A stretch of 64,000 bases of DNA from Octopus sinensis (Eukaryota). The notes under the pieces are model-generated. The model was not told the origin of the DNA. It did not search any database and saw nothing but the letters and a program-made list of their open reading frames with translations. The stretch is from assembly GCF_006345805.1 (NCBI RefSeq), contig NC_042998.1:84196001-84260000 (forward strand), in the 5' to 3' direction. How positions within the stretch are numbered: position 1 is the stretch's first letter; every line of letters begins with the position of its first letter. A program made the position numbers and the translations under genes. Below are positions 5,799 through 61,311 of this stretch, piece by piece.

Positions 5799-5903
5799 TG
5801 TTTTCGTCGGAATTTTCAGTTGCTTCGTTGCTGGTGATGTGCAAACTGTAATTCTTCGACGCGGTTGATGAAGCTGGTTCCAGGGAAGGCGCGATTCGTT
5901 TTA

Positions 5904-5914
5904 CGGGGTCACCA
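5904..5914 (-). other. Primer-binding site complementary to the tRNA-Trp 3' end
   Basis: TGGTGACCCCG lies 2 nt after the 5' LTR. Animal tRNA-Trp ends ...CGGGGUCACCA (recalled sequence). Confidence 0.8.
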
Positions 5915-5916
5915 AA

Positions 5917-10969: not shown

Positions 10970-11002
<33 letters not shown>

Positions 11003-12339
11003 TCCATCAATTGTTTTGGATCTTCTGTTACTTTCTTTATAACTTGTACTAATTTTTTTTCTTTTCAGTAGATCATTATTAGTTTCTCTTTATTCCTCTC
11101 CAGTTTTGTGTGTGTGTGCGGGCACGCTCTTTATTATTTTTTTTTACTGCTAGGATTCTATGCCCTATATTTATGGCCAGCCTTAGTTATGCTAGTGCCC
11201 CGAGGGAAGCAGAGTTTTGGTACTCTTTGAAATATAATTTTGAAATATTTTCGCATCTTTATAACAACCACAGATGTAGAAATAAATTAATCATTTTCAT
11301 CATGAACATCATAACCTTTATTTTTCCATGCTTGTGTGAATCAGAAGAACTTTGATGGTGCCAATGTTCTATGGGCAGATGGCCGTTTTGCTGCCAACCC
11401 TTAAACAAGTTAATAGCTGGAATATTGTTAGCAAATACTTGCTTTTGTGTTGTGACATTGTATGCTGATACAATGTCAAGACAGGGAGATACAAACACAC
11501 ATTCTCACACACACATTCATATTACTTGGTGACTTTGCTGGTGCCACATAAAAAAAACATCCATTACACTATGTAAAGTGACTGGCTGTAGGAAGGACAT
11601 CCACCCATAGAAACCATGTCAAAGCAGATAGCAGAGCTTGGTGCGGTCTTCTGGCTCACCAGCTGCTGTCAAACCATCCCACCCATTCCAGAATGGAAGG
11701 CAGACAGTAAATGATATATATATATATCATTTTTAGTAAAACATAAATCTGGAGAAACACACTCTAAGAAGTCTTATGATCTGATGATACACTATAAAGT
11801 TAAACCCTTTATGGACAGGAAACCCTAGGTATCCATAAACCTGCCTTCACCAGGAATATAATATATTATATATATATAATATATATATATATTATATATA
11901 TAAACAAACATATATATACAAGTAAGTGGACAAATAAAAGAAGGGCACTCAACCAATTTATTGCGAGTTAAATGTATGGATCAAAACAGTTTGATTCAAG
12001 AGTTCCAACGAATTTGAATCAAACCGTTTTGATCCATTGCATGAAAATGATAAATTTATTTCTACGTCTGTGGTTGTTATACACATGCAAAAATATATTA
12101 AAATTATATTTCAAAGAGGACCAAAACTCTGCTTTCCTTGAGGCACTAGCATTTTTCTAACTCACTCTGAAAAAAAAAAATTTTATATATACACATGCTG
12201 ATATATGACCTACGTTGGACTCCTTAATTGCATAATCACCGAACCTGGAGCTTAACTATGGTCTATCCATAGCACTTATTCAACATTACCTGATACCTTT
12301 GGGTTTTATCGACACCATTCCACTCCTAACATCTATATA

Positions 12340-12394
<55 letters not shown>

Positions 12395-15300
12395 ATTATA
12401 TATATATATTGAACACAACACTTTTTTCTTTGGTGAAGTCCAGTACCGTGACAGGCTTGATAATTGTTGAGAGATTTCTCTCTGCAAGAAGCCAATGGTA
12501 GCCTTGTTAAACTCACAAATAAACAATATTTCTCCACCAATGTGGGCATTAAGAAGGGCATCCAGCTACAGAAACCATGCCAAATCAGATTGTAACCTGG
12601 TGCAGCTCCCCAGCTTACCAGTTTTCGGTCAAGCCATCTAACCCATGCCAGCATGGAAAACAGACATGAAATGATGATGATGATGATTACACACACACAC
12701 ACACACAAATACAGATATATATACACACGTCCAACAGGTTTCTTTTCGTTTCCATCTACCTAATTCACTCAGAAGGCTTTGATTGTTTGTTTGGCCCAGG
12801 CTGTAATAGAAAACAATTTTCCATTCCAAGGTGCTGCACAGTGAAACTGAATCTAAAACCACACAGTTGTAAAATAAAATTCTTAACCCCACAGCCATGC
12901 CTGCACCTGCAATTTATAATATCCTGCTTATTGCACTTCATTATTTGGATACAGCATGGTTGAATGGTGAAGAGATCCATTTTACAGTTACCCGGTCCCA
13001 GTTTCAGTCCTACTGTGGGGTATCATAGGTGTATCTCTTTTACTATTGTGTCAAGTCCACCCATAATATGTGAATAAATCTGAGTAAATGAAAACTATAT
13101 GGAAGCCTGTTGAATGGATTAAGTCTGTAACTTAGATGTACAGCCTTTCCACGCCCTGTATCACTCTAATTCTATCTGAGAGTTACAATAATGATACACG
13201 TCTGTGGAGTACTCAGTAACATACATACTACAATAAATTCATTATCCAGGGTCATCTTTGACTTTCAACCTGTCAGACGAAATAGTACCAGTTGTATAGT
13301 GGGGTCAATGTAATCAACTAGCCCCCTCCCTGAAAATTTCAGGCCTTGTACCTCTTGTAGAAAGGATTTTCACTTGGAAAGGGAAGTGCTCTCCCACCAG
13401 CAATTTTGTTAAAAGGTGGGTGAATGTTGCAAGAATGGTTCAAGTAAATGCACCTGTAGGTTGAAGGAGGACAATGTAAAAAGGGGGCACTTGCCCAAGT
13501 GGTCAGGGGGATTCTGGTTTTGCGGTGTCTCCCATGAGCAGCCCTAGGAAGTGCCCCTCTTTTGGGGAATTATTCATTGTTATAATTTCATTTTGTTTGT
13601 TTTTATACTTTCTACATATCTTTAATGTAATCCCATGTATTGTCCTATACCATAACTTAGTGTTTTCTGGTAAACTCTTAGTGATTAATAAAGAAAACAT
13701 TTTCCTTTTTTTTTGGTGGCAAGCTGGTTGAATCATTGGAACACCAGACTAAATGCTTACCAGCATTTCATCTGTCTTCACATTCTGAGTTCAAATTCTG
13801 CTGAGGTTGAACAAGTACCAGTTGAGCACTAGTGTTGGTTTGGTGCAGTTGACTAGCCTCCGACCCTATATTTTCAGACTTTGTGCCTATTGTAGAAAAA
13901 ATTATAAAATCAGTGAGCATTTAATTCCATTGAACAACCAAGTCCCCTTCATCAAAGCTAACAGAGATCCATTTTTAATTTAGAATTCATTAAATAAAGT
14001 GTTTGATTTATTAGTTTCATGTTTTTCTTTTTTAATTTGAAGAACACAAACACATGATGTGTCAACTTCACTCAATTTACCTGTATTTTCAGCTGGCCCT
14101 TCTTTAGTATCACATTATCAATTCTCTATAACAGAAAAGTATTGATCTCACAATATTTAATATGATACCAAAGCTCATCTGTGGTAGTTTCCTTTTCTGT
14201 AAAGACTATTGAGTTAAACTCTGTTTAAAGAGTCATGTAATCCAGAACTGGCCTTCCCATAAGGCCAGCTCCAGCTTACATAACTCTCCTTAGACACACA
14301 CCTCATGTTCTGTATTATCTACAACATATCTTAATGTATAATCAGCAAAGTATAATCTGTCATATTTTTGTCAAAGTAGCACCACAATCTTCATGTTACA
14401 GCTTGCTTGCAATCTGAGATGTGGTGTGAGCATAATTAACATTAATCAGCTTTATATAAATAGAGATAGACTTGTGTTAGCTATACTTGTAGCAATTCTC
14501 TCCAATGTCCTTCCATTTTTGCTCAAATACTAATGACTACACTATCACTACTGGCTCTACATTAGGCATTTTCAGCCATATAGCGACAGGCATGGCTGTA
14601 TGGTTTTGGAGTTTGGTTCTTAACCGTATGGCTATATGTTCAATCCCACTGCATGTCGCATTGGACAAGTGTATTTTACCATAGCCTCAGGGTCCAAAGT
14701 CTTGTAAGTCGATTTGGTAGGTGGAAACTGAATGAAGCTCATCATTTTAATAAAGTGTGTGTGTGTTTATATCTCTCTCTTGACACTGTGTAATAGTTGT
14801 AAATGAGTGTAACTGTCATACAAGCAGTGTCATTTATTTCTAGTATTCTGTGAGAACACTTCTGGCCATGGGGAAAAATTCCCTTTCTTAGAAGCAGGTG
14901 AGGACTGGCAATGGAAGAGTGTCTCTGAAAATCTGCCTCAATAAACACTACCTGTCCTTTGTAAGGTCAGAAAATTGTTGTTAAAATGATGATGATTGAT
15001 AGATAGAAGATACCTAGTAATCCAGAAAATCGTTCAAATCTTGAACAGTTGTGATAGTGACTGTATTTAACCTGTTATTATATTCTTGTTGTGATACAAC
15101 TGTTTTTGATTCAATATTATTTGATAAAACAACTTTGACATTATTAGCTGGTGTTTGAAACATAAATTAACATTACAATGAGGTAGTTTTTGTGAAGTGT
15201 AACTTAAGAATGTAGTTGTATAAAGCCAGAGCAATGCAAGGAGGTACAAAGTAAACTACAAGATGAAAAGAAAACAAACAGTTGCAGTTTTACCTAGTAT

Positions 15301-18999: not shown

Positions 19000-21879
19000 G
19001 TAATATTGTTAGTCTAAATAGTTGCTGAAAAAAATGCCAATAGCTTTTTATTTTTTCAAAATTGGATCAAAGACGTTTTTTATTATTTTTATTTTTTTTT
19101 TGTTTGTTTGGCTTTTTGGGGTGGAGTTTCAATTTTTATGAATTTGTGATGCACTAAAGATTGAATAAAAAGAAATATACTGTCACACTTCACATGAAAA
19201 TTACAAAAACCTGTAAACCAATATATGCACTTAAAACAGCATTATATTACAATGATGTGTATATAATTTATGAAATATGAACAACCATAGAAAGCACTAA
19301 GGTTTTTATTTTTTTAATTTATTTTTTGTTTTTGGATGGCTGATAGGGTTGTGTCTCAGAGAATCTTCTCTTGTGAGACTTTGTGTGTTTAAAATATGGC
19401 TTGCCCTGAATGATGTCAGTGGACCATCAGACACTGATGTTTCAGCTTATGTGTCAGCTCCTCAGTGACAGGTAGTCCTTGGTTAGAACTTTCATTCCTA
19501 TATAGATAGTTTTTTTTATTCTTTCAGTCATTAGACTGCAGCCATTCTGAGGCACCACCTTGAAGAATTTTATCCAAACAAATTGACTCAGTACTTATTT
19601 TTCTTTTTTTCTTTTAAGTCTGGTGCATAGTCTATTGGTTCTATTTGGCCAAACCACTAAGTTACAAACATAAATGCACCAACACTGTTGTCAAGCAGTG
19701 GTGGGGGACAAATACACACACACACATGACAGGCTTCTTGTAATTTCCATCTATCAAATCCTCTCACAGGGCTTTGGTTAGCTGGATGCTATGGTAGAAG
19801 ACACTTGTCAAACAAGGTGTCATACATGCAATGCCAGAGCTGAATAATTAAGATAAAAGGACTGAAACAAAATTAGATAAAGGGACTAAAACAACAATAA
19901 AGGGGTTAGGAATCGCAACATTACACCTGTTAGTTTTGCCCTCTTCAAGATTCTAGAGTGAAACTGTGCCAGGGGATGGGTTTAACTTTTTGACTTTTGT
20001 ACATTTCCACCCCAGATTTGGGTCAGGAAGGTACAAGGGATAATTCAATTGCTTATACTTTATCTCCAGTGAAAATTGGCATTGTGCCTAGTTAAAAGAA
20101 ATTACTGTTTACACAAAGAAAGATAAATCATGTTTGTTTCTTTACCTTTCTCTTCTGGCAATAAATCATTCTCTCCTCTTGTCTTTTAATATCCATGTCT
20201 CTCCACTTGCTCTTCTCTCTCTCTATCATTATTGATATTCTGCTTTCTTTTACCTCTGTTTTTCATTGACACCTCTCTCTCTCTCTTCACTCTCTTTCTC
20301 TCTCTCTTCACTCTCTTTCTCTCTCTCTTCACTCTCTTTCTCTCTCTCTTCACTCTCTTTCTCTCTCTCTTCACTCTCTTTTTCTCTCTCTCTTTCTCTC
20401 TCTACTCTCTTTCTCTCTCTCCACTCTCTTTCTCTCTCTCTCTCTCTTTCTCTCTCTCCCCACTCTCTTTCTCTCTCTCTCTCTCCACTTTCTCTCACTC
20501 TCTCTCTTTCTGTCTCCACTCTCTCTCTCCCCACTCTCTTTCTCTATCTCTCTACTCTCTTTCTCTCTCTCTCCACTCTCTTTCTCTCTCTCTACTCTCT
20601 TTCTCTCTCTCTACTCTCTTTCTCTCTCTCTACTCTCTTTCTCTCTCTCTACTCTCTTTCTCTCTCTCCACTCTCTTTCTCTCTCTCCACTGTCTTTCTC
20701 TCTCTATCCACTCTCTTTCTCTCTCTCTCTCACTCTCTTTCTCTCTCTCTCTCCACTCTCTTTCTCTCTCTCTCTCCACTCTCTTCTCTCTCTATCTCTC
20801 CACTCTCTTTCTCTCTCTATCTCTCCACTCTCTTTCTCTCTCTATCTCTCCACTCTCTTTCTCTCTCTATCTCTCCACTCTCTTTCTCTCTCTAAAAAGT
20901 CCCTGGCCTGGCAATGTTACAGAGGAGCTTTACCGGTTCGAGATAAGCTCTTTAGACATGGGTGTGCACCTTCGCCGGTTTGTGCAAGATGTAAGAGGGA
21001 CAGTGAAACTGTCCTGCACGCGATTGTGCAATGCCCCAAGGTGACTGAACTCTGGACTTGTCGAACACCTGCTGTCGCATTCGAGAAGAGTACAACTGTC
21101 GAGCGAATCTGTAATTAAGATAGTTCCGCCGACCTTCCTGAATAGGGAGGAGCGAGTCAGTTTTCTTTCGGTAGTTGCTATGGCGAAATAAGTAGTGTGG
21201 AAGACGAGAGTAAAAGGAATTGCAACAGGCATGTTTATCTCCAGTCTCGAGCTAATCGACTTTTTCGTTTTCCACATGAAACGGAAAATAAGGCTGGAGA
21301 AGAAATGCCTGTCGCAAAGTGTGTTTCGTAAAAGATGGAAGTCTATAACAAGTATGTTGCGAGTGAAAGAACCTGTTTAATCGAGAATGTAAAAAAGGAG
21401 AAAGCAAAGTCTTCAGTGTGAGTATGTGGTTTGTGGGGTCGACCGCGTCCTCCGCTTCATTTTTTGTTAATCACTCATTCTCATTTAATTGTATATATTT
21501 TAATTGTTTGTTTATTCATATGTTTCGTCTCATTCGATACCCTGACCCCCAACGTTTGTTTAGTCCCCTCTTTTTCTCAACCTTATGGTGAATAAAGAAA
21601 TACTCTCTTTCTCTCTCTCCCTCTCCACTCTCTTTCTCTCTCTCCCTCTCCCTCTTCCTCTCTTCACTCTCTCTCCCCCTCTTCACTCTCTTTTTCTCTC
21701 CTTTTCTCATTACCTTTTCTCACCAATTTACTTCTCCCATCTTTATTATGTACCTCACTAATTTTAGGTTTCTCCCTTATTGGAGAAACCTTCTTCACAC
21801 TATCTGCCCCTCTCCCTCTCCCCCTCAAAATCTTTGTTTTTTTTGTTTCTCTCTTTCACTCATGACCTCTGTGATATAT

Positions 21880-21939: not shown

Positions 21940-24900
21940 CCTAATTTGTCTCTCCAGCTTGCTTTCAACCACAGAAGATTGAAACACAATCAAACACTTT
22001 TCTCTGCAACAAATGAAAAAGAAAATAAAACAAATACAAACCAGAGTGGTGATATAATTTATTGCAATTTGCTGTTGCTGCCTGTAATGCAGAGGAGAGC
22101 AAAATAAACAAATACATGAGCCTGATCAGCTGCTATCAGTTTGTTCCAGTCACTGTTGTTGAGACCTCAGGTATTGTTGGAACCCTGCATTGCTGATTTC
22201 CTCCACAGAATCGGGATAATTGAGGCTCATCTGAGAAATGAGCCCCGCAAGGTAGGGTGGCGACAGCCACCAGCCACCCTATCCTACGGGGCTGGTCAAT
22301 GTTTATTCTCTGCAGCAACACCTTTGCAATCACATCTGCAAGACATGGCACAACCCATTACTCCCTCCCCCACCATCTTCTGTTGCTTAATACACCTCTC
22401 ATTTTTTTTTCTTTTTCTTTGTTTCCTTGGTAAGATAGCTATGGGAAAGATAGCTTTCTTTTCTTCCAGTAATATTTTGTTAATTAGTATTAATGTAATT
22501 TATTATTTATATTGTCTTTTTAAGTATCGGCTCCCGTCATTTTGAAGGCTGGGAATCTCGGCCAGTCTCTGGAACCAGACTCTCTCCCATCAACAATGTA
22601 AGTAAAACAAGAACAAATTATTATTTAAATGTTTTTTCTTGCATTGCCAGAAAATATCACAAGTTTTTAATTTTTTAAATTTTATATCAACAATAAATAA
22701 TTTATTCGATTGAAGTGATCAATTTCTTAATTAAACAATGATAAAGCCACATCCCTCAATACTACACCCCACCCCTCATTTGAAGGGTCTTGTTACTTGG
22801 GGATCTCAGGTTGCTGGTGCCATGTAAAAAGCACCCAGTATACTCTGTGAAGTGGTTAGTGTTAGAAAGGGCATCCAACAGTGGGAAACAATCTGAAGCA
22901 AATGTTGGAGCTTGATGCCGCCCCCTGGTTCAGTGGCACTTGTCAAACCATCCAACCCATGCTAGTATGGAAAACAGATGTTAAACAATGGTGATGATGA
23001 TGATGGCGGTGATGTTGATGATTAAATTAAATAAGATCCCTAGGTAGAAATATCTCATTTATAAACAAAAGAGGGGAAGGGAGTTGTCTGATATATATGT
23101 GGATGTTTGTACATCTCCTTGTCTTGAATCTTGTTTTTTCTTGCATTGCCAGAAAATATCACAAGTTTTTTTAATTTTTTTTAATTTTATATCAACAATA
23201 AATAATTTATTCGATTGAACTGATCAATTTCTTAATTAAACAATGATAAAGCCACATCCCTCAATACTACACCCCACCCCTCATTTGAGGGGTCTTATCT
23301 TCTGAGTTACTTGGGGACCTCAGGTTGCTGGTGCCATTGTAAAGAAGTGTCATCATCACACAAGTGGTGCCCTTTGTTTTCAATTTTCCATGAGAAACAT
23401 GTCTGGCCACAAGTAAATATCATTTTGCTTGAATACAGATGAGGGTTGGTGACAAGAAGAGCATCCATCCATTGAAAATCTGCCTCGACATATTCCGTCT
23501 GGTGCATGCAATCTTGGAAAAGTAGTCATTAAAGTTATGATAATGATGTACCTATTGATTTATAACTCAGGTCATAAATTTGTTATGAGTAAAATAGTTG
23601 ATTGTATCGACACCACTACTTGACCAGCAGCTACATATAGAATGTTCAGAATATTAGAATAATGGTGTGTGTGTGATTTATGTAATTTACTTGCTGGGTC
23701 TAGAGAAAAGAGCAGTGCCCAAAATAGCCTTTGCAGGTCATCATAGACCAGTGGGATTGACGCCATAAATGTTCTTTATAAATCTTAGTAAATCAACACA
23801 TGCAAGAAAGATATGAGCTAGGCAGGAAGCTCAAAGGAGCAGCATTCCAGGGAGGCAGGCCTGAATATAGCGATTAGTGTGGGACCTGGTAGGTTAGACA
23901 CAACAAGGGTGATGATGAGAGATGAATAGGATGGGAATGCCTAAGTGAGAGTCTGAGCTCAGCCAGCTCTAAGAGACAGAGTCAATTATAGTTGCAGTAA
24001 AGCATTCAGAGAGGAGACAGCATATCTGTTGTTTAGAGGCTAGTTCAAGTCTTTGAGTGACTTCATGCTGATCACTTGGCTGGCCCTTTTCTGGATGCAG
24101 TCTGAAATGGTTGTGCATGCATGAGCAGCACCATCTCAAATGTGAAATCAATGCTCCATTGTGGGCCACATCTGAGCTTTATAGAGTATCAATAATTATT
24201 GAGGGGGTTACCTCCTGGCTCTGAAAAGAAGGACCAGCTGCTGGGATGCAGTCCTATTTCTTTTAAGGATGTGCTTTTGTCCAGAGAGATCGTTGATTAT
24301 AGCTCAGTATCACTCAAATTATGAGTTTACGGGCTTTAGCCAAGTGCTACTCATGATTACGGTGGAGTGTGCTGTGATGATATTTTTTGATAATATATCA
24401 CAGTATCAACCAAACCACCAGATGTTATACACCACTGGTCACAATACACTTCCAATTCTGTCTTGATTGCACCATTCTTTCATATGTTGACCCAAATTGC
24501 TTAACTAGATCATTTCTCCATCATTGCGGAGGCCTTTTCCAATCTGTTGGATACCACTCAGTCAGGGCTGGATTAAAACCAGAGAGGTCCTAAACACTCA
24601 AAAGATTTTGGTGCCTCCATATAGAATTCAAAATGTAAGCAATAATAAACCATTTCATGCCAGTGGAACGTTAAAAGCACATCCGAGTGTGACCGCTGCC
24701 AGGGCCACAGATTGGCTCCCATGCTGGTGATACGTAAAATGCACCATTCAAGCATGATCGTTGCCAACATCGCCTTACTGGCACATGTGCAGGTGCCACG
24801 TGAAAACAACATTCAAGCGTGGTTGTTGCTAGTGCTGCTGGACTGGCTCCCATTCAGGTAGCATGTAAAAACACCTTTTGAGTGTGAGCATGGTCATTAC

Positions 24901-26241
24901 CAGAACTGCCTGACTGGGCCTCGTGTCGGTGGCATGTAAAAAGCACCCACTACATTCTCAGGGTGGTTGGCATTAGGAAGGGCATCCAGCTGTAGAAACT
25001 TTGCCAGACCAGATTGAGATTGGAGCAGCCACTGGCTCACCAGTCCTCAGTCAAACCATCTAACCCATGCCAGCATGGAAAGTGGATGTCAAACGATGAT
25101 GATGATGGTGATGATGAAACAAAACTAACAGCAAGATGGAAAATAATGTTTATTTTTGTATACTTCCACTTCATCTATATTTGAAAAGTTTCCTCTGATC
25201 TTTTTTAATTGCAAAATCTGTGATCAGATTCTCAAAATGAATCTTACATAAAACATCTGCTTCTATACTTTGTAGAGGTAAGGCATCCCGAATATTATTT
25301 TAGCAAGTTTAAAGTAGTTTCTTTTGTGCCATAAACCATTTACCATTTCTGAGGAGCCCCTCTTCCTTTCATGCTCTAAGCATGTGCTTATTTTGCTTAA
25401 TGGTTAATCCAGTGCTGTGTATATATAATCATCATCATCATCATCGTTTAACGTCTGCTTTCCATGCTGGCATGGGTTGGATAGTTTGACTGAGGGCTGG
25501 CGAGCCAGAAGGCTGCACCAGTCTCCAATCTGATCTGGTAAAGTTTCTACAGCTGGATGCCTTCCTAACGCCAACCACTCCAAGAGTGTTGTGGGTACTT
25601 TTACATGCCACCAGCACGAGGGCCAGTCAGGCAGTACTGGTATCAGCCACGCTCAAATGGTGCTTTTTACATGCCACCTGCACAGTAGCCAGTCCGGTGG
25701 CACTGGCAACGACCACACTCGAATGGTGCTTTTTTTTTATGTGCTACCAGCATGAGAGCCAGTCAGCAGCCCTGGCAATGATCACGCTCGAATGGTACTT
25801 TAATGTTCCACTGGCACAGGTGCCAATCAGGCGATACTGTCATTGGCCACGACAGTGATTTCACTTGCCTTAACAGGTCTTTGCAAGCATAGTTTATTGT
25901 CCAATGATTGAAGGGTACTCTTAAATGGGCTGATTATACAGCAAAAGCCACGGTTATGATCTCACTTAATTTGCAGGGTTTTCTCAAGCACAGCATATCT
26001 CCAAAGGTCGCGGTCACTTGTCATTGCCACGGTGAGGCCCAATGTTCAAAGGTCGTGCTTCAGCACCTCATCCCAGGTCTTCCTGGGTCTACTTCTTCCA
26101 CAGGTTCCCTCAACTGCTAGGGTGTGACACTTTTTCACACAGCTGTCCTCATCCATTTGCAACACCTGACCATACCAGTGCAGTCGTCTCTCTTGCACAC
26201 CACATCTGATGTTTCTTAAGTCCAACTTTTCTCTCAGGGCG

Positions 26242-26284: not shown

Positions 26285-28888
26285 TTATTTCAAGTTTTAT
26301 AAAAAATTCGACGTCATTCAGTTATTACTCTAAGTTTGTAAATAAATGTAGTTTTCAGGTGAACTGGATACTCCATGAAACTTTTGAACATTATTTTTCA
26401 CAGAAACTTATATGCTTTTTCTTCTGTGGTATACTTTTTGTTTTGTTTTGTTTCTTTGTTCTTTTTTTTTTCATTAGATCTTGTAGGTCATAAACTTTAT
26501 ATAGTGATTACTGGTGTACTGTCTGTTTGACTTTTGTCTCATTAACATTCTTAAGATATTTATTTTATGCTTTCATTTTGAAAATTCACTCAGTGAATGA
26601 TTTATAATTTTATCTCAAGATTTAATTCGTTGCTTGACAGAGATTATAGTGTCTTGAGTTATAATACCACAAATTTGTGTCACGTCTTAAAGCTCAAGAT
26701 TCCCTTTGGTATGTTGTGTGTCAGTTTATATTTTAGGTTACTCATTTGTATAAGTTGGTCATTTTTGATAAACTTACACAGCTGTAGTAGTACTCCTTTA
26801 ACCCTTCAGCATTCAGACTGGTCATATCCAGCCTAAATATTCTACTTGTTTTATGTTCAAAACCAGCCAGATCCAGCCTCTCACACCTATCTCTCAGTAT
26901 CCTTCTAAAAATAAGCAATTGTATCATAAAAATCTCAAAGCTACATGGATGATCTCATCTCTGGGATTTAGGGAGATTATGTGCAAAAATCATTGAGTCA
27001 TTTCTACTATAGCCCCTAACCAACCAAAGCCTTGTGAGTGGATTTGATAAATGGAAACTGAAAGAAGCATTTTATATAGAGTGAAGGCACATGGTCTGGT
27101 GGCTAGGGTGTTGCACTTGTGATCACTCACAATGTGTGTGTGTGTGTGTGTGTGAGACCTTATCTTGATATCATGTGATAGTTGTAAATGAGTGTCACTG
27201 TCAAAGAAACAGTTCGTCATTTCTAGTATTTTGTGAAAGGATGTCTGACCATAGTGAAATATTAACTTGCTTGGGAACAGGTGAGGGCAGGTGACAGGAA
27301 GGGCATCCAACCGTAGAAAATCATCCTCAGCAAACTTCGCCCAACCCATGGAAAAGTGAACATAAAACGATGATAATGATGGTCCTTTTATTTGATTGTT
27401 TGAAGTCTAACACTTTAAGGTAAATATAATTACAGCCTCCTGCTTTAAACGCCGAATCAGAACCAAAATTCTTACCTCCAAAACCACCACCTGAAGAATG
27501 TAAACATTCCGGTCATAAAAATATCCGTCCCCACACTAAACTAGTCCAGCCAGGCTCTGAAGGATCAGGTTAGAATTTCTAATTATATTTGTCAAATATT
27601 GCTTATTGCTTCTTTTTCTAGTTGTTGCTTTTTTTTTTCTACCTCTTTATTGTTACTAAAACATATTTACAAAGTTTTCCTTGCTTTTAATAAGAGAGAA
27701 AAAAATATATGGTACATGATTCAGTCATGTGGGCCATTGGTGACTAAACCACCTTGCCAGCTTGGTGAGTGGGCTGGTTTTTGGACACCCTGTGGGATGG
27801 AAAGCAAGACATGTCAAGAGACAAATGAACTCAGAAGAGTCAACATTCATCCAGGTGTGTGTGTGTGCGCATGTGTGTGTGCATGCGTGCGTGCATACGC
27901 GTGTGCATGTGTGGGTGTGCAGAAATTTCTAGTTTAGTGCCCACGTGCATATTTAACTACCAAGGTAGGTTTGACTCTAAGCTATGGTAAAGGCAGCTAA
28001 CCCAGGAGATAAGAAAAGCCTGCAGTATGTTGCTCATTGAAATTACATCAAACATTTGCTCCCACTTTCTGTTATCAGTATTTCCAAAGTGTGTGGCTGG
28101 TATTACACAAGCCTTCACCATAGAAAATAAATCATCTGTTTGGTAGTCTAATAGTTATAATATTGGTTGTTAGATCCTCGTTCATAGACACCAATGGTAG
28201 AATCTACTCTGTGTGTATGTCTGTATATATATATGTATGTGTGATTATGTTATAGTGTTTACCAATTTACTATATTGCATTCCTGGGCTGGGTAGTGCAT
28301 TGTGTCTCTGAGCAAGGCACTCTATTTCACATTAGTCTACTCACCTGAAATAAATACCAGCCAGGTGCTGGTGCAGCATCACCCTTTTCCTCCAGCTCTC
28401 ACACCCTGGATATTTTACTGAGTCAAGGATGAGAAGGCTGGAAGGATATCTCCCTGTTCTTGACTAGACAGACAACTATAATAACAAAACCATGGTACAT
28501 ACTACAGAGTCAAACTGACTTGGGAGAGACATCTGGTTTTTTTTTTTTAACGTATTTATACTCTGTACACATTTTTTCATTTTTCTCAACATCTGCTGCT
28601 TATATCATTTATATTTTATTTATATATTCACATCTTTATTTTATATATAGACAGACAGACAGACAGACCGACACACACACACACACACATTCTGTGTATT
28701 AGGATTTCATAGCATTTTCTTAAATATTTACACCTATAGGCACTGGAGTGACTGTATCGTAAGTAGCTCGCTTACCAACCACATGGTTCCGGGTTCAGTC
28801 CCACTTCAGCAAGTGTCTTCTAGTATAGCCTCGGGCCAACCAAAGCCTTTTGAGTTGATTTGGTTGATGGAAACGGAAAGAAGCCCAT

Positions 28889-28939
<51 letters not shown>

Positions 28940-31900
28940 CTTTGTTTGTCCCCCCAGCATCACTTGACAACCAATGTTGCTGCGTTTATGTCCCCATAAC
29001 TTAGCAGTTTGGCAAAAAGAGACACATAGGATAAGTACTAGGCTTACAAAGAATAAGTCCTAGGATCAATTTGTTTGACTAAAGGCAGTGCTCCAGCATG
29101 GCCACAGTCAAATGACTGAAACAAATAAAAGAATATTCCAAACATATATGATATACTATATATTATGTCATAACTTTGTTTTATTTTTATATATTTTTTT
29201 ATTAAATATTATATGATTATATTCCATTCATGAAAAAAATATTTGACCAACCAAGCTATCTTTCATAATTCTTTATAATCTTCAGAAAAAGTGAGAAGAA
29301 ACAAAGAAACAAGAGATGGAAAAGACAAAACACAAGCCTCGAAGAGAGCAACTTCTGAACAGTAAGTTGAAAGTCCTCACTCTCTTTCTCTCTCTCACTC
29401 TCTCTTACTGTTTTCATGTTGTGAATGAGGTGATGTAAGGGCAAACAAAATAGATGAAATGAAATGAAAATTTAAAAAATTGGTGGATGTGTGGTAAGAA
29501 GCTTGCTTCCCATCCACATAGTTCCAGGTTCTGTCCCACAGTGTGACACCTTGGGCAAATGTCTTTTGCTATAGCCTCAGATGACCAAATCCTTTTGAGT
29601 AGATTTGATAGATGGAAACTGAAAGAAGCCCATCGTGTATAGATATGTGAGTGTGCACGCGTTTGTCTTTGTGTCTCTGTTTGTCCTACACCACTGCTTG
29701 ATAACCAGTATTGTATTTACATCCCTATAACTTAGTGGTTTGGCAAAAAGAGACACATAGGATAAGTACTAGGCTTACAAAGAATAAGTCCTAGGATCAA
29801 TTTGTTTGACTAAAGGCAGTGCTCCAGCATGGCCACAGTCAAATGACTGAAACAAATAAAAGAATATTCCAAACATATATGATATACTATATATTATGTC
29901 ATAACTTTGTTTTATTTTTATATATTTTTTTATTAAATATTATATGATTATATTCCATTCATGAAAAAAATATTTGACCAACCAAGCTATCTTTCATAAT
30001 TCTTTATAATCTTCAGAAAAAGTGAGAAGAAACAAAGAAACAAGAGATGGAAAAGACAAAACACAAGCCTCGAAGAGAGCAACTTCTGAACAGTAAGTTG
30101 AAAGTCCTCACTCTCTTTCTCTCTCTCACTCTCTCTTACTGTTTTCATGTTGTGAATGAGGTGATGTAAGGGCAAACAAAATAGATGAAATGAAATGAAA
30201 ATTTAAAAAATTGGTGGATGTGTGGTAAGAAGCTTGCTTCCCATCCACATAGTTCCAGGTTCTGTCCCACAGTGTGACACCTTGGGCAAATGTCTTTTGC
30301 TATAGCCTCAGATGACCAAATCCTTTTGAGTAGATTTGATAGATGGAAACTGAAAGAAGCCCATCGTGTATAGATATGTGAGTGTGCACGCGTTTGTCTT
30401 TGTGTCTCTGTTTGTCCTACACCACTGCTTGATAACCAGTATTGTATTTACATCCCTATAACTTAGTGGTTTGGCAAAAGAGACTAATAGAATAAGTGCT
30501 AGGATCGATTCATTCAGCTACAAATTCTTCAAGGCAATGCTCCAGCATGGCCTCAGTCTAATGACTGAAACAAGTAAAAGATTAAAAGGATAAATAAAAA
30601 CTTACTGAATATATCCTGGTTTTAGAACAGATGCAATGCATCCCTGTGTGTCATGTGACTTAAAGGGTCATCAATAGAAAGGGTATGCAGCCGCAGAACA
30701 CTGTCTCCAGTAAACCTTTCCAACATACGCATGCATGGAAAAGCAAAAGTGGTGGTGGTGGTGGTGGTGAGAAGCCAAAGGTCAAGTAACCACATTGTGC
30801 ACATTCAGTCAGTGCCTTGCTTCAGCAGTTGTTTTTCCTTCACCACACAAGTATTTCTAATGAGGGTTTTCATAGATGCTACATTAAATATGTTAGCACT
30901 AAGTTAACTATTGTTTTAAATGCAGATATCATCATCATTTAATGTCCATCTTTTATGCTGGCATAGTTGGATGGTTTGACAGGAACTTGCAAGCCAGAGG
31001 ACTGCACTAAGCTCCACTATATGATTTGGCATGGTTTTTACAGCTGGATTCCAACCACTTTACAGAGTATACTCTGTGTAATTAACCTCAGTGGTTTATT
31101 TAATTATATACTTTTAGTTATTCCAATTTTCATGCATTCTCTAGCAAAATATTGTACATCTTCATAGAGATTCTCTCATCACTACTTCAGTAAGTACAGT
31201 GATGCCTATGCTTTGCTGATGAAGTGTAATAATACCAAAACATGTCTAGAATTATCTCCCATATTTACTAAAAGAACATAGATCCAATAACGGGCAGTCA
31301 ACAACTATTGAAGAGGTTGCAAGAAACAATGAAAATTTTAGCAAAAAAAATGTAAATGGGTAGAAATTGAATCGGTGAGTGTGTTAATTAATAAGGCATT
31401 AAAACAGAATGACTCTCCCCCGACACAACAAAATTAAAAGAATATTAGACAGTGAGCTAATGTTATGTGTTTTTTCGCAGCATGGGAAAAGCAGACATAA
31501 AAATGAAACAAATTTTCCAATTCCCCATGAAATAGAAAAATGCATGGCTATATATGTGAGAAAGTGTTGTCGTAATTCTGCTTGATAATTTTACATCTGA
31601 TTCATTGATTTATATCAATTGCTCGTCATTACAGTGTCGTTAATGAGGATGAACATATCAACCAAGATGGTTCTAAACAACATCTTGTAAATACTGACAG
31701 TAAGTAGTAATGTTTTTTTACCCCCACCATCACTCCCACTATAGTCATTGTTGTTGTTTTTTTCTGTTTGCTTTGTTTTCCTGATCAGAGTGTGAATGGT
31801 GAAGGCACTGGGCTTACTGGTTAGGGTGCTTGGTTCATGATTGTAAAGTTGTGATTCTGATTCTCGGCAGTGCATTGTGTCCTTGAGCAAGACACTTTAT

Positions 31901-36338: not shown

Positions 36339-39300
36339 ATGTATGTCTGGGTGAGTCGATATGTCCCTCATTTTCATGGTGTGTGTTTTCTGTGTCATTT
36401 GCTTACAGTCCACCATGAAAGCATGTCCAGGTATCTTAGCATGTCTTGACATGTTGCACAATCTTTGTAAACAAATGGCTTATTCATATGGTGTTTGTTT
36501 CCAGTTCTCCACATAAATGTCTGGGCTGTTTGTTGTTGAATATTAACTCACTTGGAAATACGGAGGTTGGTAACAGGAAGACTATTTGACTGTAGAAGCC
36601 TCTGCGCCATGCTCTCATTTCACCCACACAAGCATGAAAAAGTAGGCATTTTAATGATAATACAAGAGAAAGTAATATACAAAAATCTTGTAAAGAAAAA
36701 TTTTTATATTTCTACATATCAAAAGAAGAGTATGGGTAAAATCACTGGAAGATTTTCCTAAATTCATTGCAGTCATATCATCTTGTCTCTCTAGGAACAG
36801 TGTTGCGTTTCTTGTCTTTGAAGCTGATAAAAATCAATTCAATCAATTATACGCATCCTTTATGAAAAATGTGCTTAATCAGGAAAATAAAATCAATGCT
36901 TGTATATAATAAAACACCTAAATATATATATAAAATAGATCATTGAATTACAAGGGTATTTGTTATAGCATATTTAAAAAGCAGCACCAGCTATTTCAGA
37001 TAAATGATATTCAAATATCATACAGGATAAGTATATTTGGTGTGAATAACTCCTTGAAACATTTTTCCCCTCCTTTTTGAAGGCTACATTAGAAAATTAT
37101 CAAACAAATTATTCTTGAAAGTCGTTATGTTAATGGTATGATTATAGATTTTTCCTTTTTATTTTTTTTTTACAAAGCTACAACACTATAAATGCCCAGC
37201 TGTTTCTGTTAACTCATTGTTCATGTATTGTATCATTATTGTTATCATCATAATTCTAATGTGTTTCCCATGCTTGCTTAAAAATATAAGGATAAAAATT
37301 CTTCCTGAGTTGTATAGGCTCATAAGGCTAGTTTCCCAATTTCTGTGGTGCATATATTCCCACTGGATGGAATGCCTGTCCATCTCAGGAATACTCATTT
37401 TTGCCTGCTGTGTGGACGAGAGCAACGTAAAATGAAGTGTTTTGCTCAAGAATGCAACACTTAACCCAGTCCAGGAATCAAAACCACAATCTTACGATCA
37501 TAAGTCTGACACCTTAACTTCTAAGCCACATACCTCCACCACATGCTGCATGTCATGCTGTTATTCCTTATAGTCTTTTGTCATTCCATCGATAATGCAC
37601 TGTAACCTAAGATTTGACCTTGCTACTTGTATTTCCCATGTCATTCTCAGTCTTCCTCTTTCTGTATCTACCACATTTTCCATCCATCATTCACCATCCA
37701 TTCACATCAAATGCCTTTATGTCTCCCTTCATGCCTTTAAATATGTAACCACACTTTTTGCTCTTCACCTTACAATTAGCTTTTAGTCACACTCTTAGCT
37801 CTTAGCCACACTCTATTTAGTTTGTGCTCCATATAAGTTGATATGGTACATTGACCAACTCATGCTTCACTTGTTTCTCATCACTCTCCATAAGTCCTCC
37901 CAATTTATTATTGATCTCTCACTATCATATAAAATCACTCTTCTCACACATGTCTTGCACAGTTTGTCTTTAACATTAAAAGAGAAGCCTTTTTGTTGCA
38001 AACAGATGTAATGCCTCTTTGAATTACTCCCACCTCTTCCTTACTCTTGCTACTAAACTTTCACTACAACCACCTCTGACATTTGTTATGTCACCTGGTT
38101 AACAGTTCTCCAGCAAGAACTTTGTGGTTGTCCTTTCATTTGTGCACTTAGGCTGGTGAGGGATCATCATTGTGCTAGTTAATTCTTATGTGGAATAACT
38201 GGACTCTTAGACTTTGTGTTGGAGGAACATGTCTTGCTCATGCATTTTATTTTTGACATGGTTTCTATGGCAACTATTGGTAACTACCACTGTGCAGTAA
38301 CTGTATATATATAACATATGAAGGATACTTGTGATAGGGAAGGTTATAGTAGGCTGGATAACTGCTATGTGGTGGGGGGAAATGCAGAGTTGATGGTGAA
38401 ATTTGAACCCAGATGCAGGTATGGCTGTGTAGTAAAGAAGCATGCTTTCCAACCTTGTAGGTTTAGGTTCAGTCCCATGCTACAGCACCTTGGGAAAGTG
38501 TCTTCTACTAAATATCTAGGCCATCTAAGGCCTTGTGAGTGGATTTGGTAGATGGAAACTGAAAAAAGCCCATTGTATATAGATTCAGATGTGTGTGTGT
38601 CTGTCTGTCTGTCCTTTCTTGACATCACATTGATGGTTCTAAACAAGTTTCAACATATACAAGCAATGTTGCTCATTTCCAGTCTTCCATGAATACTATG
38701 TCCAGCTATGGGAAAATATTTCTTGGCTTGGAATCAAGTTAGTGTTGGAAACAGGAAAGGCATCCAGGTGTAAAAATAATCTACCTCAATAAATTCCGTC
38801 TGACTCATATAAACATGAATAAGTGAACATTAAAACAACGATAATGATGATGAAAGTACATTAACAAAATTTAAACACTGTGATGTGTCTACTGTTTCAG
38901 TTACATTTACATCCAAGTCATTATAATGTATTGTAATTAATGTTGTTTCTTATTTCAGCTCAGCTGCTGCAGGTGGTTCCTATATCAGATCCAGTGTCCT
39001 GTTCTGAAGCTCTGACATATTGTGTTGGAACTCTTAAGCTTCTGTCTGGTAACAGCAGCATTATGAAAGAACTTGTGCACAGAGAATGTATAGAGTTACT
39101 TACTTCTTTGTTGCAGTCTATCAACCTGACTGTAAGTATGGTATGTACCTATTATACAGGTATATATGATCACACAGGTGTATTGTGACAGTAAATATTC
39201 TAGAAAGTAAAATGACCACTTGATTACAAGAAACTTGCTTATAATTAACTGACCCAATAATCAATAATTGGTGAGAACCATACAACAGGAAGTGCGTTCA

Positions 39301-42300: not shown

Positions 42301-45300
42301 AACTTAGCAGTTCAGCAAAAGAGAGCAATAGAATAAGTACTAGGCTTACAAAGAATAAGTCCTCAAGTCAGTTTATATGACTAAAGGCAGTGCTCCAGCA
42401 CTGAAATGAGTAAAAGAATAAAAGAGTATGTAAATATATATATACTAGCAGTATCGCCCGGCGTTGCTCGGGTTTGTAAGGGAAATAATTATATAAGCAT
42501 TTTTAGAGATGTAAAGTATAATAGCCATCTCAATATGGCTAACCACAAAGGGGGAGGGGTGTTACTGTAGCTTTTTACGTTCTGAGATTTAATAATAAAT
42601 TTTAGAGAGTTACTTCCCTTATATATGTCAAAAATGGATTAAAAATGGGAAAAATTGATGGTAATTTTTTTTTTAAATCGTAGACTCATCGTAGACGCGC
42701 GCTAATACCCAGACGGTCTCGATATGAATCACGACTATAAGATACCTGGTTTTGGTTAAACTGCACCGCAAAATGTGGGAGTTGTTAGGAATCTAAATCG
42801 TAGGAGACAGACACACAACCTCACTTTTATATATAAAGATTTCCTCTATTTACATAATATTGAGGTCTCTTTCTTTCTTTTGTTATCTTACTGTTTTTAC
42901 CAATATACATATATATATATATATAAATATATATATAGTTACAGAGATGTACTTGCATAGCAAGTGACTTGATCTGAGATCGTGTGCTGGAACGAAAACA
43001 GTTGCAGCGTTGAAGGTGTTTATAAGCCATTTAAGAAACACAAAAACCGTTAGATTCACTTCAACATTTAAATTAAATTTGTCAAAATATTTTCGTCGCT
43101 TTGAGACCGCGACCTGTTAGCACGATATTTTTGTCAGTGAACAGGTCGCGGTCTCAAAGCGACGAAAATATTTTGGCAAATTAAATTTAAATGTTGAAGT
43201 GAATGTAACGGTTTTTGTGTGTTTCTTAAATGGCTTACAAACACCTTCCACGCTGCAATATATATACACACATATATATATATGTATGTATGTATGTGTG
43301 TATATGTGTATGCATGTATGTGTGTGTGTGTGTGCGTGTCTGTGCTTGTGATTGTCCTCCACCACTGCTTGACAACGAATGTTGGTTTGTTTACATCCCT
43401 GTCACCTAGTGGTTTGACAAAGGAAACAGATAGAATAAGTACAATGCTTACAAAAATAAAACTGGAGTTGATTCATTAAACTACAATTCTTCAAGGCATT
43501 GCCCCAGCATGGCCACAGAGCAATGGCTGGAAAAAGCAGAAGAATAAAAGAATTGAGGGGGACCTCTACATGGTAGCTAGACCTGGTAGAAATAGCAGCA
43601 AAATTTCCCCCAAATCACACCTTACTGTCTTATCTATGTATATATGTATGTATGAGCCTATGAGGGAGACCCCTACATGGCAGCTAGACATGGTAGAAAT
43701 AGCAGCCAAATCTCCCTCAAATCACACCTTACTGTCTTATCTTTCTGCTACTTGGATATAGGTGTTATATTCGTCTAAAAAAACTTTCCTGTCACACACT
43801 CAAGCACACGCACACACACACACACACACGCACCGTCACACACACACGCGCACGCACACACACACACGCACGTTAGCTTACAATTTTATTTATATATTTG
43901 CGTGTGTATGTGTGGAAAGAGGAAGTGGGAGGCAGAGTGAAAGAATCACTCACCACAGTAAGTGAATTAGTTTCATTTTATTCGTTGCCCACTGTGTGTG
44001 TGCGTTTGCGTGTGGTGTAAACCAGACTAAGAAAAGCATTTGACACACACACCAGAATGTGAGTTTTCTGTAAATTTTGCTTAATTGGAGTTTAAATTTT
44101 AAAAACTGGACCTGGCATGACGCGATGCATTGTACTCTTAAAAATGCCAGGTAAATTGTAATTGAAGAAATCCTATATTGTAGATTTGTATAACTCCCAA
44201 AGGGAGGCAGATAAAATCTGCCTTTTATAATAAGAGATATATATATATATCTCATCTAGCATCATCATCATCATCCAACATTCGTCTTTCATGCTAGTAT
44301 GTGTTGGATAATTTGACAGGAGCTGATAAACTAGAGGACTGTGCCATGCTCCATTGTCCACTTTGGCATGAGTTTTGCTTCCTAATGCTAACCATTTTCC
44401 AAAGTGAAATAGGTACTTTTTATGTGGCACAAGCACTAGTGAGGTCACCAAGTAAATTGCAAGACAAAGATCCCTCAACTGAGATGGGGAGTGGTACAAG
44501 GGAGGTGAAACATAGATAGGTGTATGTATGTATGTATGTATATATATATATATATATATATAAATATATATATAGTTACAGAGATGTACTTGCATAGCAA
44601 GTGACTTGATCTGAGATCGTGTGCTGGAACGAAAACAGTTGCAGCGTTGAAGGTGTTTATAAGCCATTTAAGAAACACAAAAACCGTTAGATTCACTTCA
44701 ACATTTAAATTAAATTTGTCAAAATATTTTCGTCGCTTTGAGACCGCGACCTGTTAGCACGATATTTTTGTCAGTGAACAGGTCGCGGTCTCAAAGCGAC
44801 GAAAATATTTTGGCAAATTAAATTTAAATGTTGAAGTGAATGTAACGGTTTTTGTGTGTTTCTTAAATGGCTTACAAACACCTTCCACGCTGCAATATAT
44901 ATATACACACATATATATATATGTATGTATGTATGTGTGTATATGTGTATGCATGTATGTGTGTGTGTGTGTGCGTGTCTGTGCTTGTGATTGTCCTCCA
45001 CCACTGCTTGACAACGAATGTTGGTTTGTTTACATCCCTGTCACCTAGTGGTTTGACAAAGGAAACAGATAGAATAAGTACAATGCTTACAAAAATAAAA
45101 CTGGAGTTGATTCATTAAACTACAATTCTTCAAGGCATTGCCCCAGCATGGCCACAGAGCAATGGCTGGAAAAAGCAGAAGAATAAAAGAATTGAGGGGG
45201 ACCTCTACATGGTAGCTAGACCTGGTAGAAATAGCAGCAAAATTTCCCCCAAATCACACCTTACTGTCTTATCTATGTATATATGTATGTATGAGCCTAT

Positions 45301-46171
45301 GAGGGAGACCCCTACATGGCAGCTAGACATGGTAGAAATAGCAGCCAAATCTCCCTCAAATCACACCTTACTGTCTTATCTTTCTGCTACTTGGATATAG
45401 GTGTTATATTCGTCTAAAAAAACTTTCCTGTCACACACTCAAGCACACGCACACACACACACACACACGCACCGTCACACACACACGCGCACGCACACAC
45501 ACACACGCACGTTAGCTTACAATTTTATTTATATATTTGCGTGTGTATGTGTGGAAAGAGGAAGTGGGAGGCAGAGTGAAAGAATCACTCACCACAGTAA
45601 GTGAATTAGTTTCATTTTATTCGTTGCCCACTGTGTGTGTGCGTTTGCGTGTGGTGTAAACCAGACTAAGAAAAGCATTTGACACACACACCAGAATGTG
45701 AGTTTTCTGTAAATTTTGCTTAATTGGAGTTTAAATTTTAAAAACTGGACCTGGCATGACGCGATGCATTGTACTCTTAAAAATGCCAGGTAAATTGTAA
45801 TTGAAGAAATCCTATATTGTAGATTTGTATAACTCCCAAAGGGAGGCAGATAAAATCTGCCTTTTATAATAAGAGATATATATATATCTCATCTAGCATC
45901 ATCATCATCATCCAACATTCGTCTTTCATGCTAGTATGTGTTGGATAATTTGACAGGAGCTGATAAACTAGAGGACTGTGCCATGCTCCATTGTCCACTT
46001 TGGCATGAGTTTTGCTTCCTAATGCTAACCATTTTCCAAAGTGAAATAGGTACTTTTTATGTGGCACAAGCACTAGTGAGGTCACCAAGTAAATTGCAAG
46101 ACAAAGATCCCTCAACTGAGATGGGGAGTGGTACAAGGGAGGTGAAACATAGATAGGTGTATGTATGTATG

Positions 46172-46208
<37 letters not shown>

Positions 46209-47323: not shown

Positions 47324-47355
<32 letters not shown>

Positions 47356-47646
47356 CACACACACTCTCTCTCTCACACACATGCACACATTTATATTCTG
47401 TTATTCTTTTATATGTTTCAGCCTTGAGGTTGTGGCCATGCTGGATCATGTGTGTGTGTGTGTGTGTGTCTATCTGTCTGTCTGTCTGTATGTGTATATG
47501 TATGTGTGTGAACAATAATATTTTCAACAGATGTGTTGCAAATGTATCTGATTGTTCTCAAGCTTCAATACTGTGTGTGTGTGTATGTGTGTGTGTATGT
47601 GTGTGTGTGTGTATGTATGTATATGTATGTATGTATGTGTGTATGT

Positions 47647-47686
<40 letters not shown>

Positions 47687-61238: not shown

Positions 61239-61311
<73 letters not shown>

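What the first reader, a model, noticed from the sequence alone, without database searches (positions are those of the whole stretch)
28745..30596. SINE-SINE unequal crossover duplicated a frame-shifting ARMC2 coding exon
The arrangement is SINE-A / exon D / chimeric SINE (5' from B, 3' from A) / exon D / SINE-B. The switch lies at the homologous position GTTTGGCAAAA, the footprint expected from non-allelic homologous recombination between two diverged SINE copies. Exon D is 76 nt (phase 1 in, 2 out). Using exactly one copy keeps the frame. Using both reads into TGA at 30087-30089, and skipping both also shifts the frame. The 655-nt spacer is long enough for both to be spliced and the splice sites are identical. 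So this allele either makes PTC-containing transcripts, needs mutually exclusive choice, or is a very recent or segregating variant. ARMC2 is a known flagellar axoneme assembly factor (human sperm flagellar defects; Chlamydomonas PF27 radial-spoke transport), so a fertility effect is conceivable. Identical copies also allow an assembly error.
Basis: partly seen in the sequence, partly recalled or inferred. Interest (0 to 1): 0.7.

Follow-up and report, generated by a model that had tools for sequence, protein, structure and literature searches.

The report
SINE-mediated duplication of ARMC2 exon
In the Octopus sinensis reference genome a 731-base stretch holding one 76-base coding exon of the sperm-tail/cilia gene ARMC2 is present twice in tandem, joined by a hybrid of the two flanking SINE repeats, whereas the sister species O. 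vulgaris has it once; the type of event is ordinary, but this copy would break the gene unless exactly one exon copy is spliced in.

Summary
Window 29007-29748 equals 29738-30479 base for base (742 nt, period 731). The order is SINE-A, 76-nt exon, hybrid SINE (5' part from B, 3' part from A, switch inside GTTTGGCAAAA), the same exon again, SINE-B.

The gene is ARMC2. The window is Octopus sinensis assembly GCA_006345805.1. Splicing in exactly one exon copy reproduces 429 residues of the annotated O. sinensis protein. Two copies stop at TGA 30087-30089. No copy stops at TAA 31688.

New evidence:
- The independent O. vulgaris assembly has the pre-duplication arrangement (SINE-A, one exon, SINE-B).
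- Argonauta hians has a single 76-nt orthologous exon.
- Both O. sinensis copies share all five differences from O. vulgaris, so the event post-dates the species split (about 2.5 My).

The two SINEs are only about 80% alike and share no exact block longer than 15 nt. The exchange is therefore better described as homeologous or microhomology-mediated, like human Alu/Alu rearrangements, than as classical homologous recombination.

Two things remain untested: whether the duplication is real in the animal or an assembly error (about 0.3), and how the exon pair is spliced. This is a new member of a known kind, of modest interest.

The parts
28744..29135 (+). SINE-A, the upstream parental repeat copy (about 390 nt, with an internal (TA)n(TG)n run)
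   Evidence: Aligns with the two other copies and with at least 15 further copies or fragments on both strands of the window. The orthologous copy is present in O. vulgaris at L002 25224-25612.
29007..29737 (+). Duplicated unit, copy 1 (731 nt): 3' part of SINE-A, unique intron sequence, exon D, unique intron sequence, 5' part of SINE-B type
   Evidence: Identical to 29738-30468. Differs from the O. vulgaris orthologue at 4 substitutions and 1 indel.
29286..29361 (+). ARMC2 coding exon D, copy 1 (76 nt, phase 1 in, 2 out), encoding (E)KVRRNKETRDGKDKTQASKRATSE
   Evidence: Splice sites and phases. Collinear match to Argonauta ARMC2 residues 136-161. [quoted passage not shown]
29480..29866 (+). 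Hybrid SINE at the duplication junction: B-type 29480-29737, switch interval 29738-29748 (GTTTGGCAAAA), A-type 29749-29866
   Evidence: Three-way alignment. Absent from O. vulgaris, which has only A and B.
29738..30468 (+). Duplicated unit, copy 2 (731 nt)
   Evidence: 0 differences from copy 1.
30017..30092 (+). ARMC2 coding exon D, copy 2, identical to copy 1. It contains the out-of-frame TGA (30087-30089) that is read if both copies are spliced in.
30211..30596 (+). SINE-B, the downstream parental repeat copy
   Evidence: Orthologue in O. vulgaris at L002 25959-26340. Also aligned in O. bimaculoides (window 30112-32339 matches L003 19354-21622 at 90%).
27436..27568 (+). ARMC2 exon C, upstream neighbour (133 nt, phase 0 in, 1 out)
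   Evidence: tblastn of Argonauta ARMC2 residues 93-136; boundaries and phases.
31635..31699 (+). ARMC2 exon E, downstream neighbour (65 nt, phase 2 in, 1 out). It contains the TAA at 31688 that is read if both D copies are skipped.

Best explanation
This is a young tandem duplication on the O. sinensis reference haplotype.

Origin:
- The ancestral allele, still seen in O. vulgaris, carried one 76-nt ARMC2 exon between two old, diverged SINE copies in the same orientation.
- An exchange between misaligned copies took place inside an 11-nt identical block at the same position of both SINEs. SINE-B of one template paired with SINE-A of the other.
- The exchange was either an unequal crossover or, more likely given the low similarity, a replication template switch or microhomology-mediated repair.
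- It duplicated 731 bp and left a B-5'/A-3' hybrid SINE between the copies. This part is shown, apart from the choice of repair pathway.

Inferred consequence:
- The exon is 76 nt (3n+1), and both copies carry the same splice sites and flanking intron sequence.
- Only transcripts with exactly one copy encode ARMC2.
- Transcripts with both copies, which I take to be the default outcome for two equally good exons 655 nt apart, stop after 185 codons, before all armadillo repeats. They should be removed by nonsense-mediated decay.
- The allele is therefore most likely a partial or complete loss-of-function variant. It would be carried heterozygously or at low frequency and caught by chance in the reference individual.
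For: - Repeat structure and in-register hybrid junction.
- Parental single-copy arrangement with intact SINE-A and SINE-B in an independent assembly of the sister species.
- Both copies carry all 5 O. sinensis-specific states, and the copies differ at 0 of 731 positions. The event therefore lies on the O. sinensis lineage and is recent relative to the roughly 2.5 My split (PMC10700109).
- The exon is real and constitutive. It occurs once in all annotated O. sinensis and O. vulgaris isoforms and in Argonauta, and the Argonauta orthologue is 76 nt with the same phases.
- Reading-frame consequences were computed directly.
- No N run or contig boundary lies in the window.
- The duplication boundaries sit at homologous positions of two repeats, as in human Alu/Alu rearrangements with a hybrid Alu and short junction microhomology (PMC6071635).
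- ARMC2 loss causes flagellar and ciliary defects in Chlamydomonas, mouse and man (PMC8789290, PMC13246696). A loss-of-function allele should therefore be young and rare, which fits copies that are still identical.
Against: - No read-level or transcript-level evidence could be obtained.
- Perfect identity of the copies and a clean hybrid junction are also what a false overlap between the two SINEs during assembly of noisy long reads would produce.
- The O. sinensis assembly has ten times more duplicated BUSCO genes than the O. vulgaris assembly (5.2% against 0.5%, PMC10700109), which hints at some false duplication.
- The annotated proteins all use the exon once. That is compatible with normal expression from this allele, so the loss-of-function inference is untested.
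Confidence: 0.62

Rival explanations
1. Assembly artefact. The animal has one copy. The long-read assembler joined reads through a false overlap between SINE-B and SINE-A (or mishandled a heterozygous region), writing the 731 bp twice with a consensus that switches from B to A inside the overlap.
For: - The copies are 100% identical over 742 nt.
- Such a junction would also be in register.
- The assembly derives from PacBio reads with Hi-C (title of Li et al. 2020, cited in PMC10700109) and has raised BUSCO duplication of 5.2%.
- The same window holds another near-perfect tandem duplication (1637 bp, 99.64%), in a region where O. vulgaris is 4.7 kb shorter.
Against: - A 390-nt repeat pair that is only 70-80% identical is a poor substrate for a false overlap when reads of many kilobases span it.
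- There is no gap or contig end nearby.
- Haplotype-type false duplications do not end at homologous positions of two different repeats.
- Structural differences of this size are common between the two species in this window (about ten in 64 kb), so a real one is not surprising.
Confidence: 0.28
2. The duplication is real and is tolerated or fixed: a newborn mutually exclusive exon pair. Splicing includes one copy in most transcripts, nonsense-mediated decay removes the rest, and ARMC2 output stays adequate.
For: - The pair has equal length, equal phase and equal splice sites, and an exon length that is not a multiple of three. These are the signature used to predict mutually exclusive exons derived from tandem exon duplication (PMC6071210 and its references).
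- All annotated O. sinensis isoforms contain the exon once.
Against: - The 655-nt intron imposes no steric block.
- No docking/selector complementarity was found; only microsatellite and AT-rich inverted matches turned up.
- The pair is not conserved: O. vulgaris and Argonauta have one copy.
- From my own knowledge, not tested here: in human disease, out-of-frame tandem exon duplications usually give transcripts with both copies.
Confidence: 0.12
3. An older duplication kept identical by gene conversion between the copies.
For: Tandem copies 731 bp apart are good substrates for conversion.
Against: - The duplication is absent from O. vulgaris.
- There is not a single difference in 731 nt, and both copies carry the same five lineage-specific states. 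Recent origin explains this more simply.
Confidence: 0.03

Closest known systems
Alu/Alu-mediated rearrangements in humans that duplicate or delete exons (for example in LDLR, BRCA1, SPAST)
   Same: - Two same-orientation SINE copies flank the affected exon.
- The product carries one hybrid SINE with the switch at the same position in both parents.
- The junction has short microhomology (here 11 nt).
- An out-of-frame internal exon is duplicated.
(PMC6071635; PMC10835926, listed.)
   Different: - The repeat is an unrelated cephalopod SINE-like family, and the parents are more diverged (about 80% or 70%) than most Alu pairs.
- The event sits in a reference genome of a wild invertebrate, not in a patient, so its phenotype and frequency are unknown.
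Mutually exclusive exon pairs born by tandem exon duplication, with frame-policing by nonsense-mediated decay (FGFR2 IIIb/IIIc type)
   Same: Adjacent exon copies have the same length, phase and splice sites, and the length is not a multiple of three. Only single inclusion keeps the frame (PMC6071210).
   Different: - The copies are still identical, so there is no protein diversity.
- The pair is not conserved in sister taxa.
- No competing RNA structure was detected.
- Mutual exclusivity was not shown.
ARMC2 / Chlamydomonas PF27
   Same: The host gene is the octopus orthologue (E 1.8e-130 to Argonauta ARMC2; named orthologues from molluscs to vertebrates). ARMC2 is the cargo adapter for intraflagellar transport of radial spokes, and its loss gives flagellar defects (PMC8789290).
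   Different: Nothing is known about octopus ARMC2 function. The duplicated exon encodes a poorly conserved Lys/Arg/Glu-rich linker (11 of 26 residues shared with Argonauta), so what matters is the reading frame and not the peptide.
False duplications in genome assemblies
   Same: Identical adjacent copies in an assembly with raised BUSCO duplication.
   Different: No gap lies between or beside the copies. The boundaries fall at homologous positions of two diverged repeats, and the unit is only 731 bp.

Membership tests
Repeat-mediated (Alu/Alu-type) tandem duplication | The ancestral allele has the segment once, flanked by two repeat copies in the same orientation | tested here: met
   O. vulgaris L002 25224-26340 reads SINE-A, exon D (25762-25837), SINE-B.
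Repeat-mediated (Alu/Alu-type) tandem duplication | One hybrid repeat at the junction, switching in register, with 5' from the downstream parent and 3' from the upstream parent | tested here: met
   Three-way alignment; the switch lies inside GTTTGGCAAAA at 29738-29748.
Repeat-mediated (Alu/Alu-type) tandem duplication | The rearrangement is present in the DNA of the organism (spanning reads or PCR) | not testable with these tools
   No read archive is reachable. The exact look-up of a junction-spanning ORF found nothing.
Classical non-allelic homologous recombination | A long stretch of near-identity between the substrates (hundreds of bp, per PMC6071635) | tested here: not met
   SINE-A against SINE-B: 286 identical of 359 ungapped columns (80%), 70% with gaps, longest exact block 15 nt, elements about 390 nt.
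ARMC2 orthologue | Best matches are named ARMC2 across animals, and the exons are collinear with an orthologue | tested here: met
   Eleven exons in the window reproduce 429 aa of XP_036370751.1 exactly.
Constitutive coding exon (exon D) | Present in the annotated products of several species, with conserved length and phase | tested here: met
   - Present once in 4 O. sinensis and 3 O. vulgaris products and in Argonauta.
- The Argonauta exon is 76 nt, with 50 of 76 nt identical.
- The O. bimaculoides models lack it only because the exon falls in an N gap.
Mutually exclusive exon pair | Same length, phase and splice sites, and sequence homology | tested here: met
   The copies are identical.
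Mutually exclusive exon pair | Transcripts contain one and only one of the pair | not testable with these tools
   No transcript data are available. The protein search with the predicted two-copy product gave no relevant hit, but it also missed the known O. sinensis protein, so it is uninformative.
Mutually exclusive exon pair | A mechanism that enforces exclusivity (short intron, or competing RNA structures) | tested here: not met
   The intron is 655 nt. Only low-complexity inverted matches occur across 27569-31634. Frame-policing by nonsense-mediated decay remains possible.
SINE | Short interspersed repeat present in many dispersed copies | tested here: met
   At least 15 copies or fragments of the roughly 390-nt unit lie on both strands of the 64-kb window, with many more in the O. 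bimaculoides locus.
SINE | Head derived from a small RNA gene with pol III promoter boxes | tested here: inconclusive
   ARAGORN and Rfam found no tRNA-like match. A B-box-like GGTTCAGTCC can be read in SINE-A, by eye only.

The most novel reading that the evidence does not exclude
The duplication is real, common or fixed in O. sinensis, and tolerated. That would make it a mutually exclusive exon pair caught at the moment of birth. The two copies are still identical, and nonsense-mediated decay of the 0-copy and 2-copy transcripts is the only thing enforcing 'one and only one', before any regulatory RNA structure or sequence divergence has evolved.
Probability: 0.12. Interest if true: 0.55.

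Novelty: new member of a known kind. Interest (0 to 1): 0.33.

Why it matters
If real, the O. sinensis reference carries a probably damaging structural allele of a gene needed to build sperm tails and motile cilia. Users of this reference and its annotation should know that ARMC2 has an extra, frame-breaking exon copy there.

It is also a clean, datable example outside mammals of interspersed repeats reshaping a coding gene, with both parental repeats preserved in a sister species. It offers a natural test of what the splicing machinery does with two identical out-of-frame exons. If it is an artefact, it is a useful flag for local errors in this assembly.

Tried and rejected
- Word-index protein search with concatenated exons and with the predicted two-copy truncated product. 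Both missed even the 100%-identical O. sinensis ARMC2, so their silence on D-D transcripts means nothing.
- Pfam and PDB sequence searches of the N-terminal exon chain gave no useful match. Gene identity came instead from the full HMMER scan and source names.
- Human ARMC2 recalled from memory served only as a lead to locate exons and was replaced by database proteins.
- A crude splice-site and ORF scan for the neighbouring exons found exon F but not C or E. tblastn with Argonauta ARMC2 found them.
- L001 was fetched as a 'sister' locus but proved to be the window itself (56,341 of 56,341 identical). It is therefore not independent evidence.
- An exact look-up of a 59-aa ORF spanning the hybrid junction, aimed at read-level contigs, found nothing on record.
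- Tandem Repeats Finder found nothing because its longest period is 500.
- Rfam and ARAGORN gave no tRNA-like head for the SINE.
- The idea that competing RNA structures enforce mutual exclusivity found no support.
- The idea that exon D might be part of a repeat was rejected. The unique part of the unit has a single orthologous place in O. vulgaris and O. bimaculoides.
Full report
**What is in the sequence.**
- The region contains a direct repeat of period 731. Positions 29007-29748 and 29738-30479 are identical over 742 nt. The repeat finder reports the same pair and three copies of several SINE segments spaced 731 nt apart.
- Three copies of a roughly 390-nt interspersed repeat lie at 28744-29135 (A), 29480-29866 (middle) and 30211-30596 (B).
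- In a three-way alignment the middle copy equals B up to the 11-mer GTTTGGCAAAA and equals A after it. That 11-mer is the only stretch shared by all three at the switch, and it accounts for the 742 versus 731 difference.
- The repeat family is dispersed. At least 15 further copies or fragments lie on both strands of the window. No tRNA-like head was detected by ARAGORN or Rfam, so 'SINE' rests on size and dispersion.

**The gene and the exon.**
- A full HMMER scan with the conserved exons of the + strand gave 352 hits. The best (E 1.8e-130, 82% identity) is the ARMC2-like protein of Argonauta hians. Others are named armadillo repeat-containing protein 2 in molluscs and vertebrates.
- tblastn of the Argonauta protein onto the window laid out eleven collinear exons, and I fixed their boundaries by eye.
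- Spliced with one copy of the 76-nt exon, either copy, they translate to 429 residues identical to O. sinensis XP_036370751.1.
- The phases are: exon C 0 to 1, exon D 1 to 2, exon E 2 to 1.
- Exon D encodes (E)KVRRNKETRDGKDKTQASKRATSE. This segment occurs exactly once in all four O. sinensis isoforms, all three O. vulgaris products and Argonauta.
- The Argonauta exon is also 76 nt with canonical splice sites, and 50 of 76 nt are identical.
- The two O. bimaculoides models lack exons C and D, but in that assembly both exons fall into runs of N (L003 16830-17819 and 19143-19351). The first 25 nt of exon D are visible at the gap edge. That absence is therefore an annotation artefact.

**Reading-frame consequences.**
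- One copy: ARMC2.
- Two copies: ...ATSEQKSEKKQRNKRWKRQNTSLEESNF, then TGA at 30087-30089, giving 185 residues without any armadillo repeat.
- No copy: a frameshift to TAA at 31688, giving 154 residues.
- The intron between the copies is 655 nt. The two exons share identical splice sites and at least 118 nt of identical intron on each side.

**Where the window comes from, and the sister species.**
- The O. sinensis ARMC2 locus fetched from GCA_006345805.1 (CM016860.1, 84,203,660-84,276,639) is identical to window 7660-64000 over 56,341 nt. The window is therefore that assembly, and this locus is not independent evidence.
- The O. vulgaris locus (GCA_951406725.2, OX597815.1; an ONT-based assembly, PMC10700109) is 96.6-99% identical in the aligned blocks outside the microsatellite-rich stretches (94% in one short block) and contains exon D once.
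- Read directly, that locus shows SINE-A, unique sequence, exon D, unique sequence, SINE-B. This is exactly the predicted parental arrangement, with no hybrid SINE.

**Age.**
- The 731-nt unit differs from its O. vulgaris orthologue at four substitutions and one indel. Both O. sinensis copies carry the same state at all five sites, and the copies differ from each other nowhere.
- With a species split of about 2.5 My (PMC10700109), a duplication as old as the split should show about five differences between copies. Observing none has a Poisson probability of about 0.007.
- The event is therefore clearly younger. By the local rate the bound is roughly under 1.5 My; by the regional rate it is roughly under 0.5 My.

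**Mechanism.**
- The polarity of the hybrid (5' from the downstream repeat, 3' from the upstream one) is that of the duplication product of an exchange between misaligned copies.
- A and B share 80% identity in ungapped columns (70% with gaps), and no exact block exceeds 15 nt.
- The human literature on the analogous Alu/Alu rearrangements argues that such substrates are too short and too diverged for classical homologous recombination. It favours template switching during replication repair or microhomology-mediated end joining, both of which also leave an intact hybrid element (PMC6071635).

**What it does (inferred).**
- Nothing in the sequence would make the splicing machinery choose one copy. 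The intron is long enough, and a search of the three introns for complementary docking/selector segments found only microsatellite and AT-rich matches.
- The default expectation is inclusion of both copies, a premature stop and mRNA decay. That means a hypomorphic or null allele of a gene whose loss disrupts flagella and cilia in Chlamydomonas, mouse and man (PMC8789290, PMC13246696).
- A recessive, male-sterilising allele would be expected to be young and rare, which fits the identical copies.
- The alternative is that single inclusion is frequent enough for the allele to be harmless, with decay of the other forms acting as the policing step, as in some mutually exclusive exon pairs (PMC6071210). 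This cannot be excluded.

**Artefact or real.**
- No reads could be reached.
- Perfect identity and an in-register junction fit a false overlap between the two SINEs as well as they fit a real recent event.
- The O. sinensis assembly has 5.2% duplicated BUSCOs against 0.5% in O. vulgaris.
- Against an artefact: the repeats are short and only 70-80% alike, no gap or contig end is near, and structural differences of this size are frequent between the two species here.
- I put the artefact at about 0.28.

**Verdict.** The event is a new member of a well-known kind (repeat-mediated exon duplication). Interest is modest, and would rise if the allele proves common and tolerated.

Noticed in passing
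window 631-6501 (- strand): A young LTR retroelement.
- 586-nt LTRs at 630-1209 and 5916-6501 are 98.6% identical.
- One 1081-aa ORF carries reverse transcriptase, RNase H and integrase domains, and one 325-aa gag-like ORF carries DUF7041.
- It is absent from the orthologous O. vulgaris site, where the two flanks join directly. The target-site duplication is GACA.
- It interrupts an older ORF that encodes a CCHC zinc knuckle (window 200-652 continued at 6480-6689).

   Followed up: partly
window 42441-48116: A second recent tandem duplication: 42903-44570 against 44540-46207 (period 1637, 99.64% identical), with a partial third copy at 47847-48129. O. vulgaris has only about 1 kb where O. sinensis has 5.7 kb, and parts are inverted. 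This is either a real expansion or a further sign of local assembly trouble.
   Followed up: partly
L003 16830-17819 and 19143-19351 (O. bimaculoides): Runs of N cover ARMC2 exons C and D. Both O. bimaculoides protein models (XP_052821844.1, XP_014776348.1) skip them and patch the frame with odd residues (IF, ISIACHYS). This is an annotation artefact and not a species difference.
   Followed up: yes
window 39131-39140: Two donor sites 9 nt apart at the end of exon I explain the annotated isoforms with and without the tripeptide VSM (SINLT|DPS against SINLTVSMDPS).
   Followed up: partly
window 2-97: The 899-aa O. vulgaris ARMC2 model (P0269) starts with an 80-residue extension, and part of it (CKETEVDIKEFGRH...SPPQE) is encoded here. 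This sits at the start of an ORF series that looks derived from a mobile element (CCHC knuckle downstream), so the extension may be a chimeric annotation. The O. sinensis models start at MACLMEAK or MEAK instead.
   Followed up: no
window 20198-20894: A CT-rich repeat block that translates as long LSLSLS runs aligns to many shifted positions in O. vulgaris, so the array is length-variable between the species. It lies in the ARMC2 intron between exons 1 and 2.
   Followed up: no
window 10884-13858, 23133-23337, 51197-51582, 60499-61275: [quoted passage not shown] With those above, this makes about ten structural differences in 64 kb.
   Followed up: no
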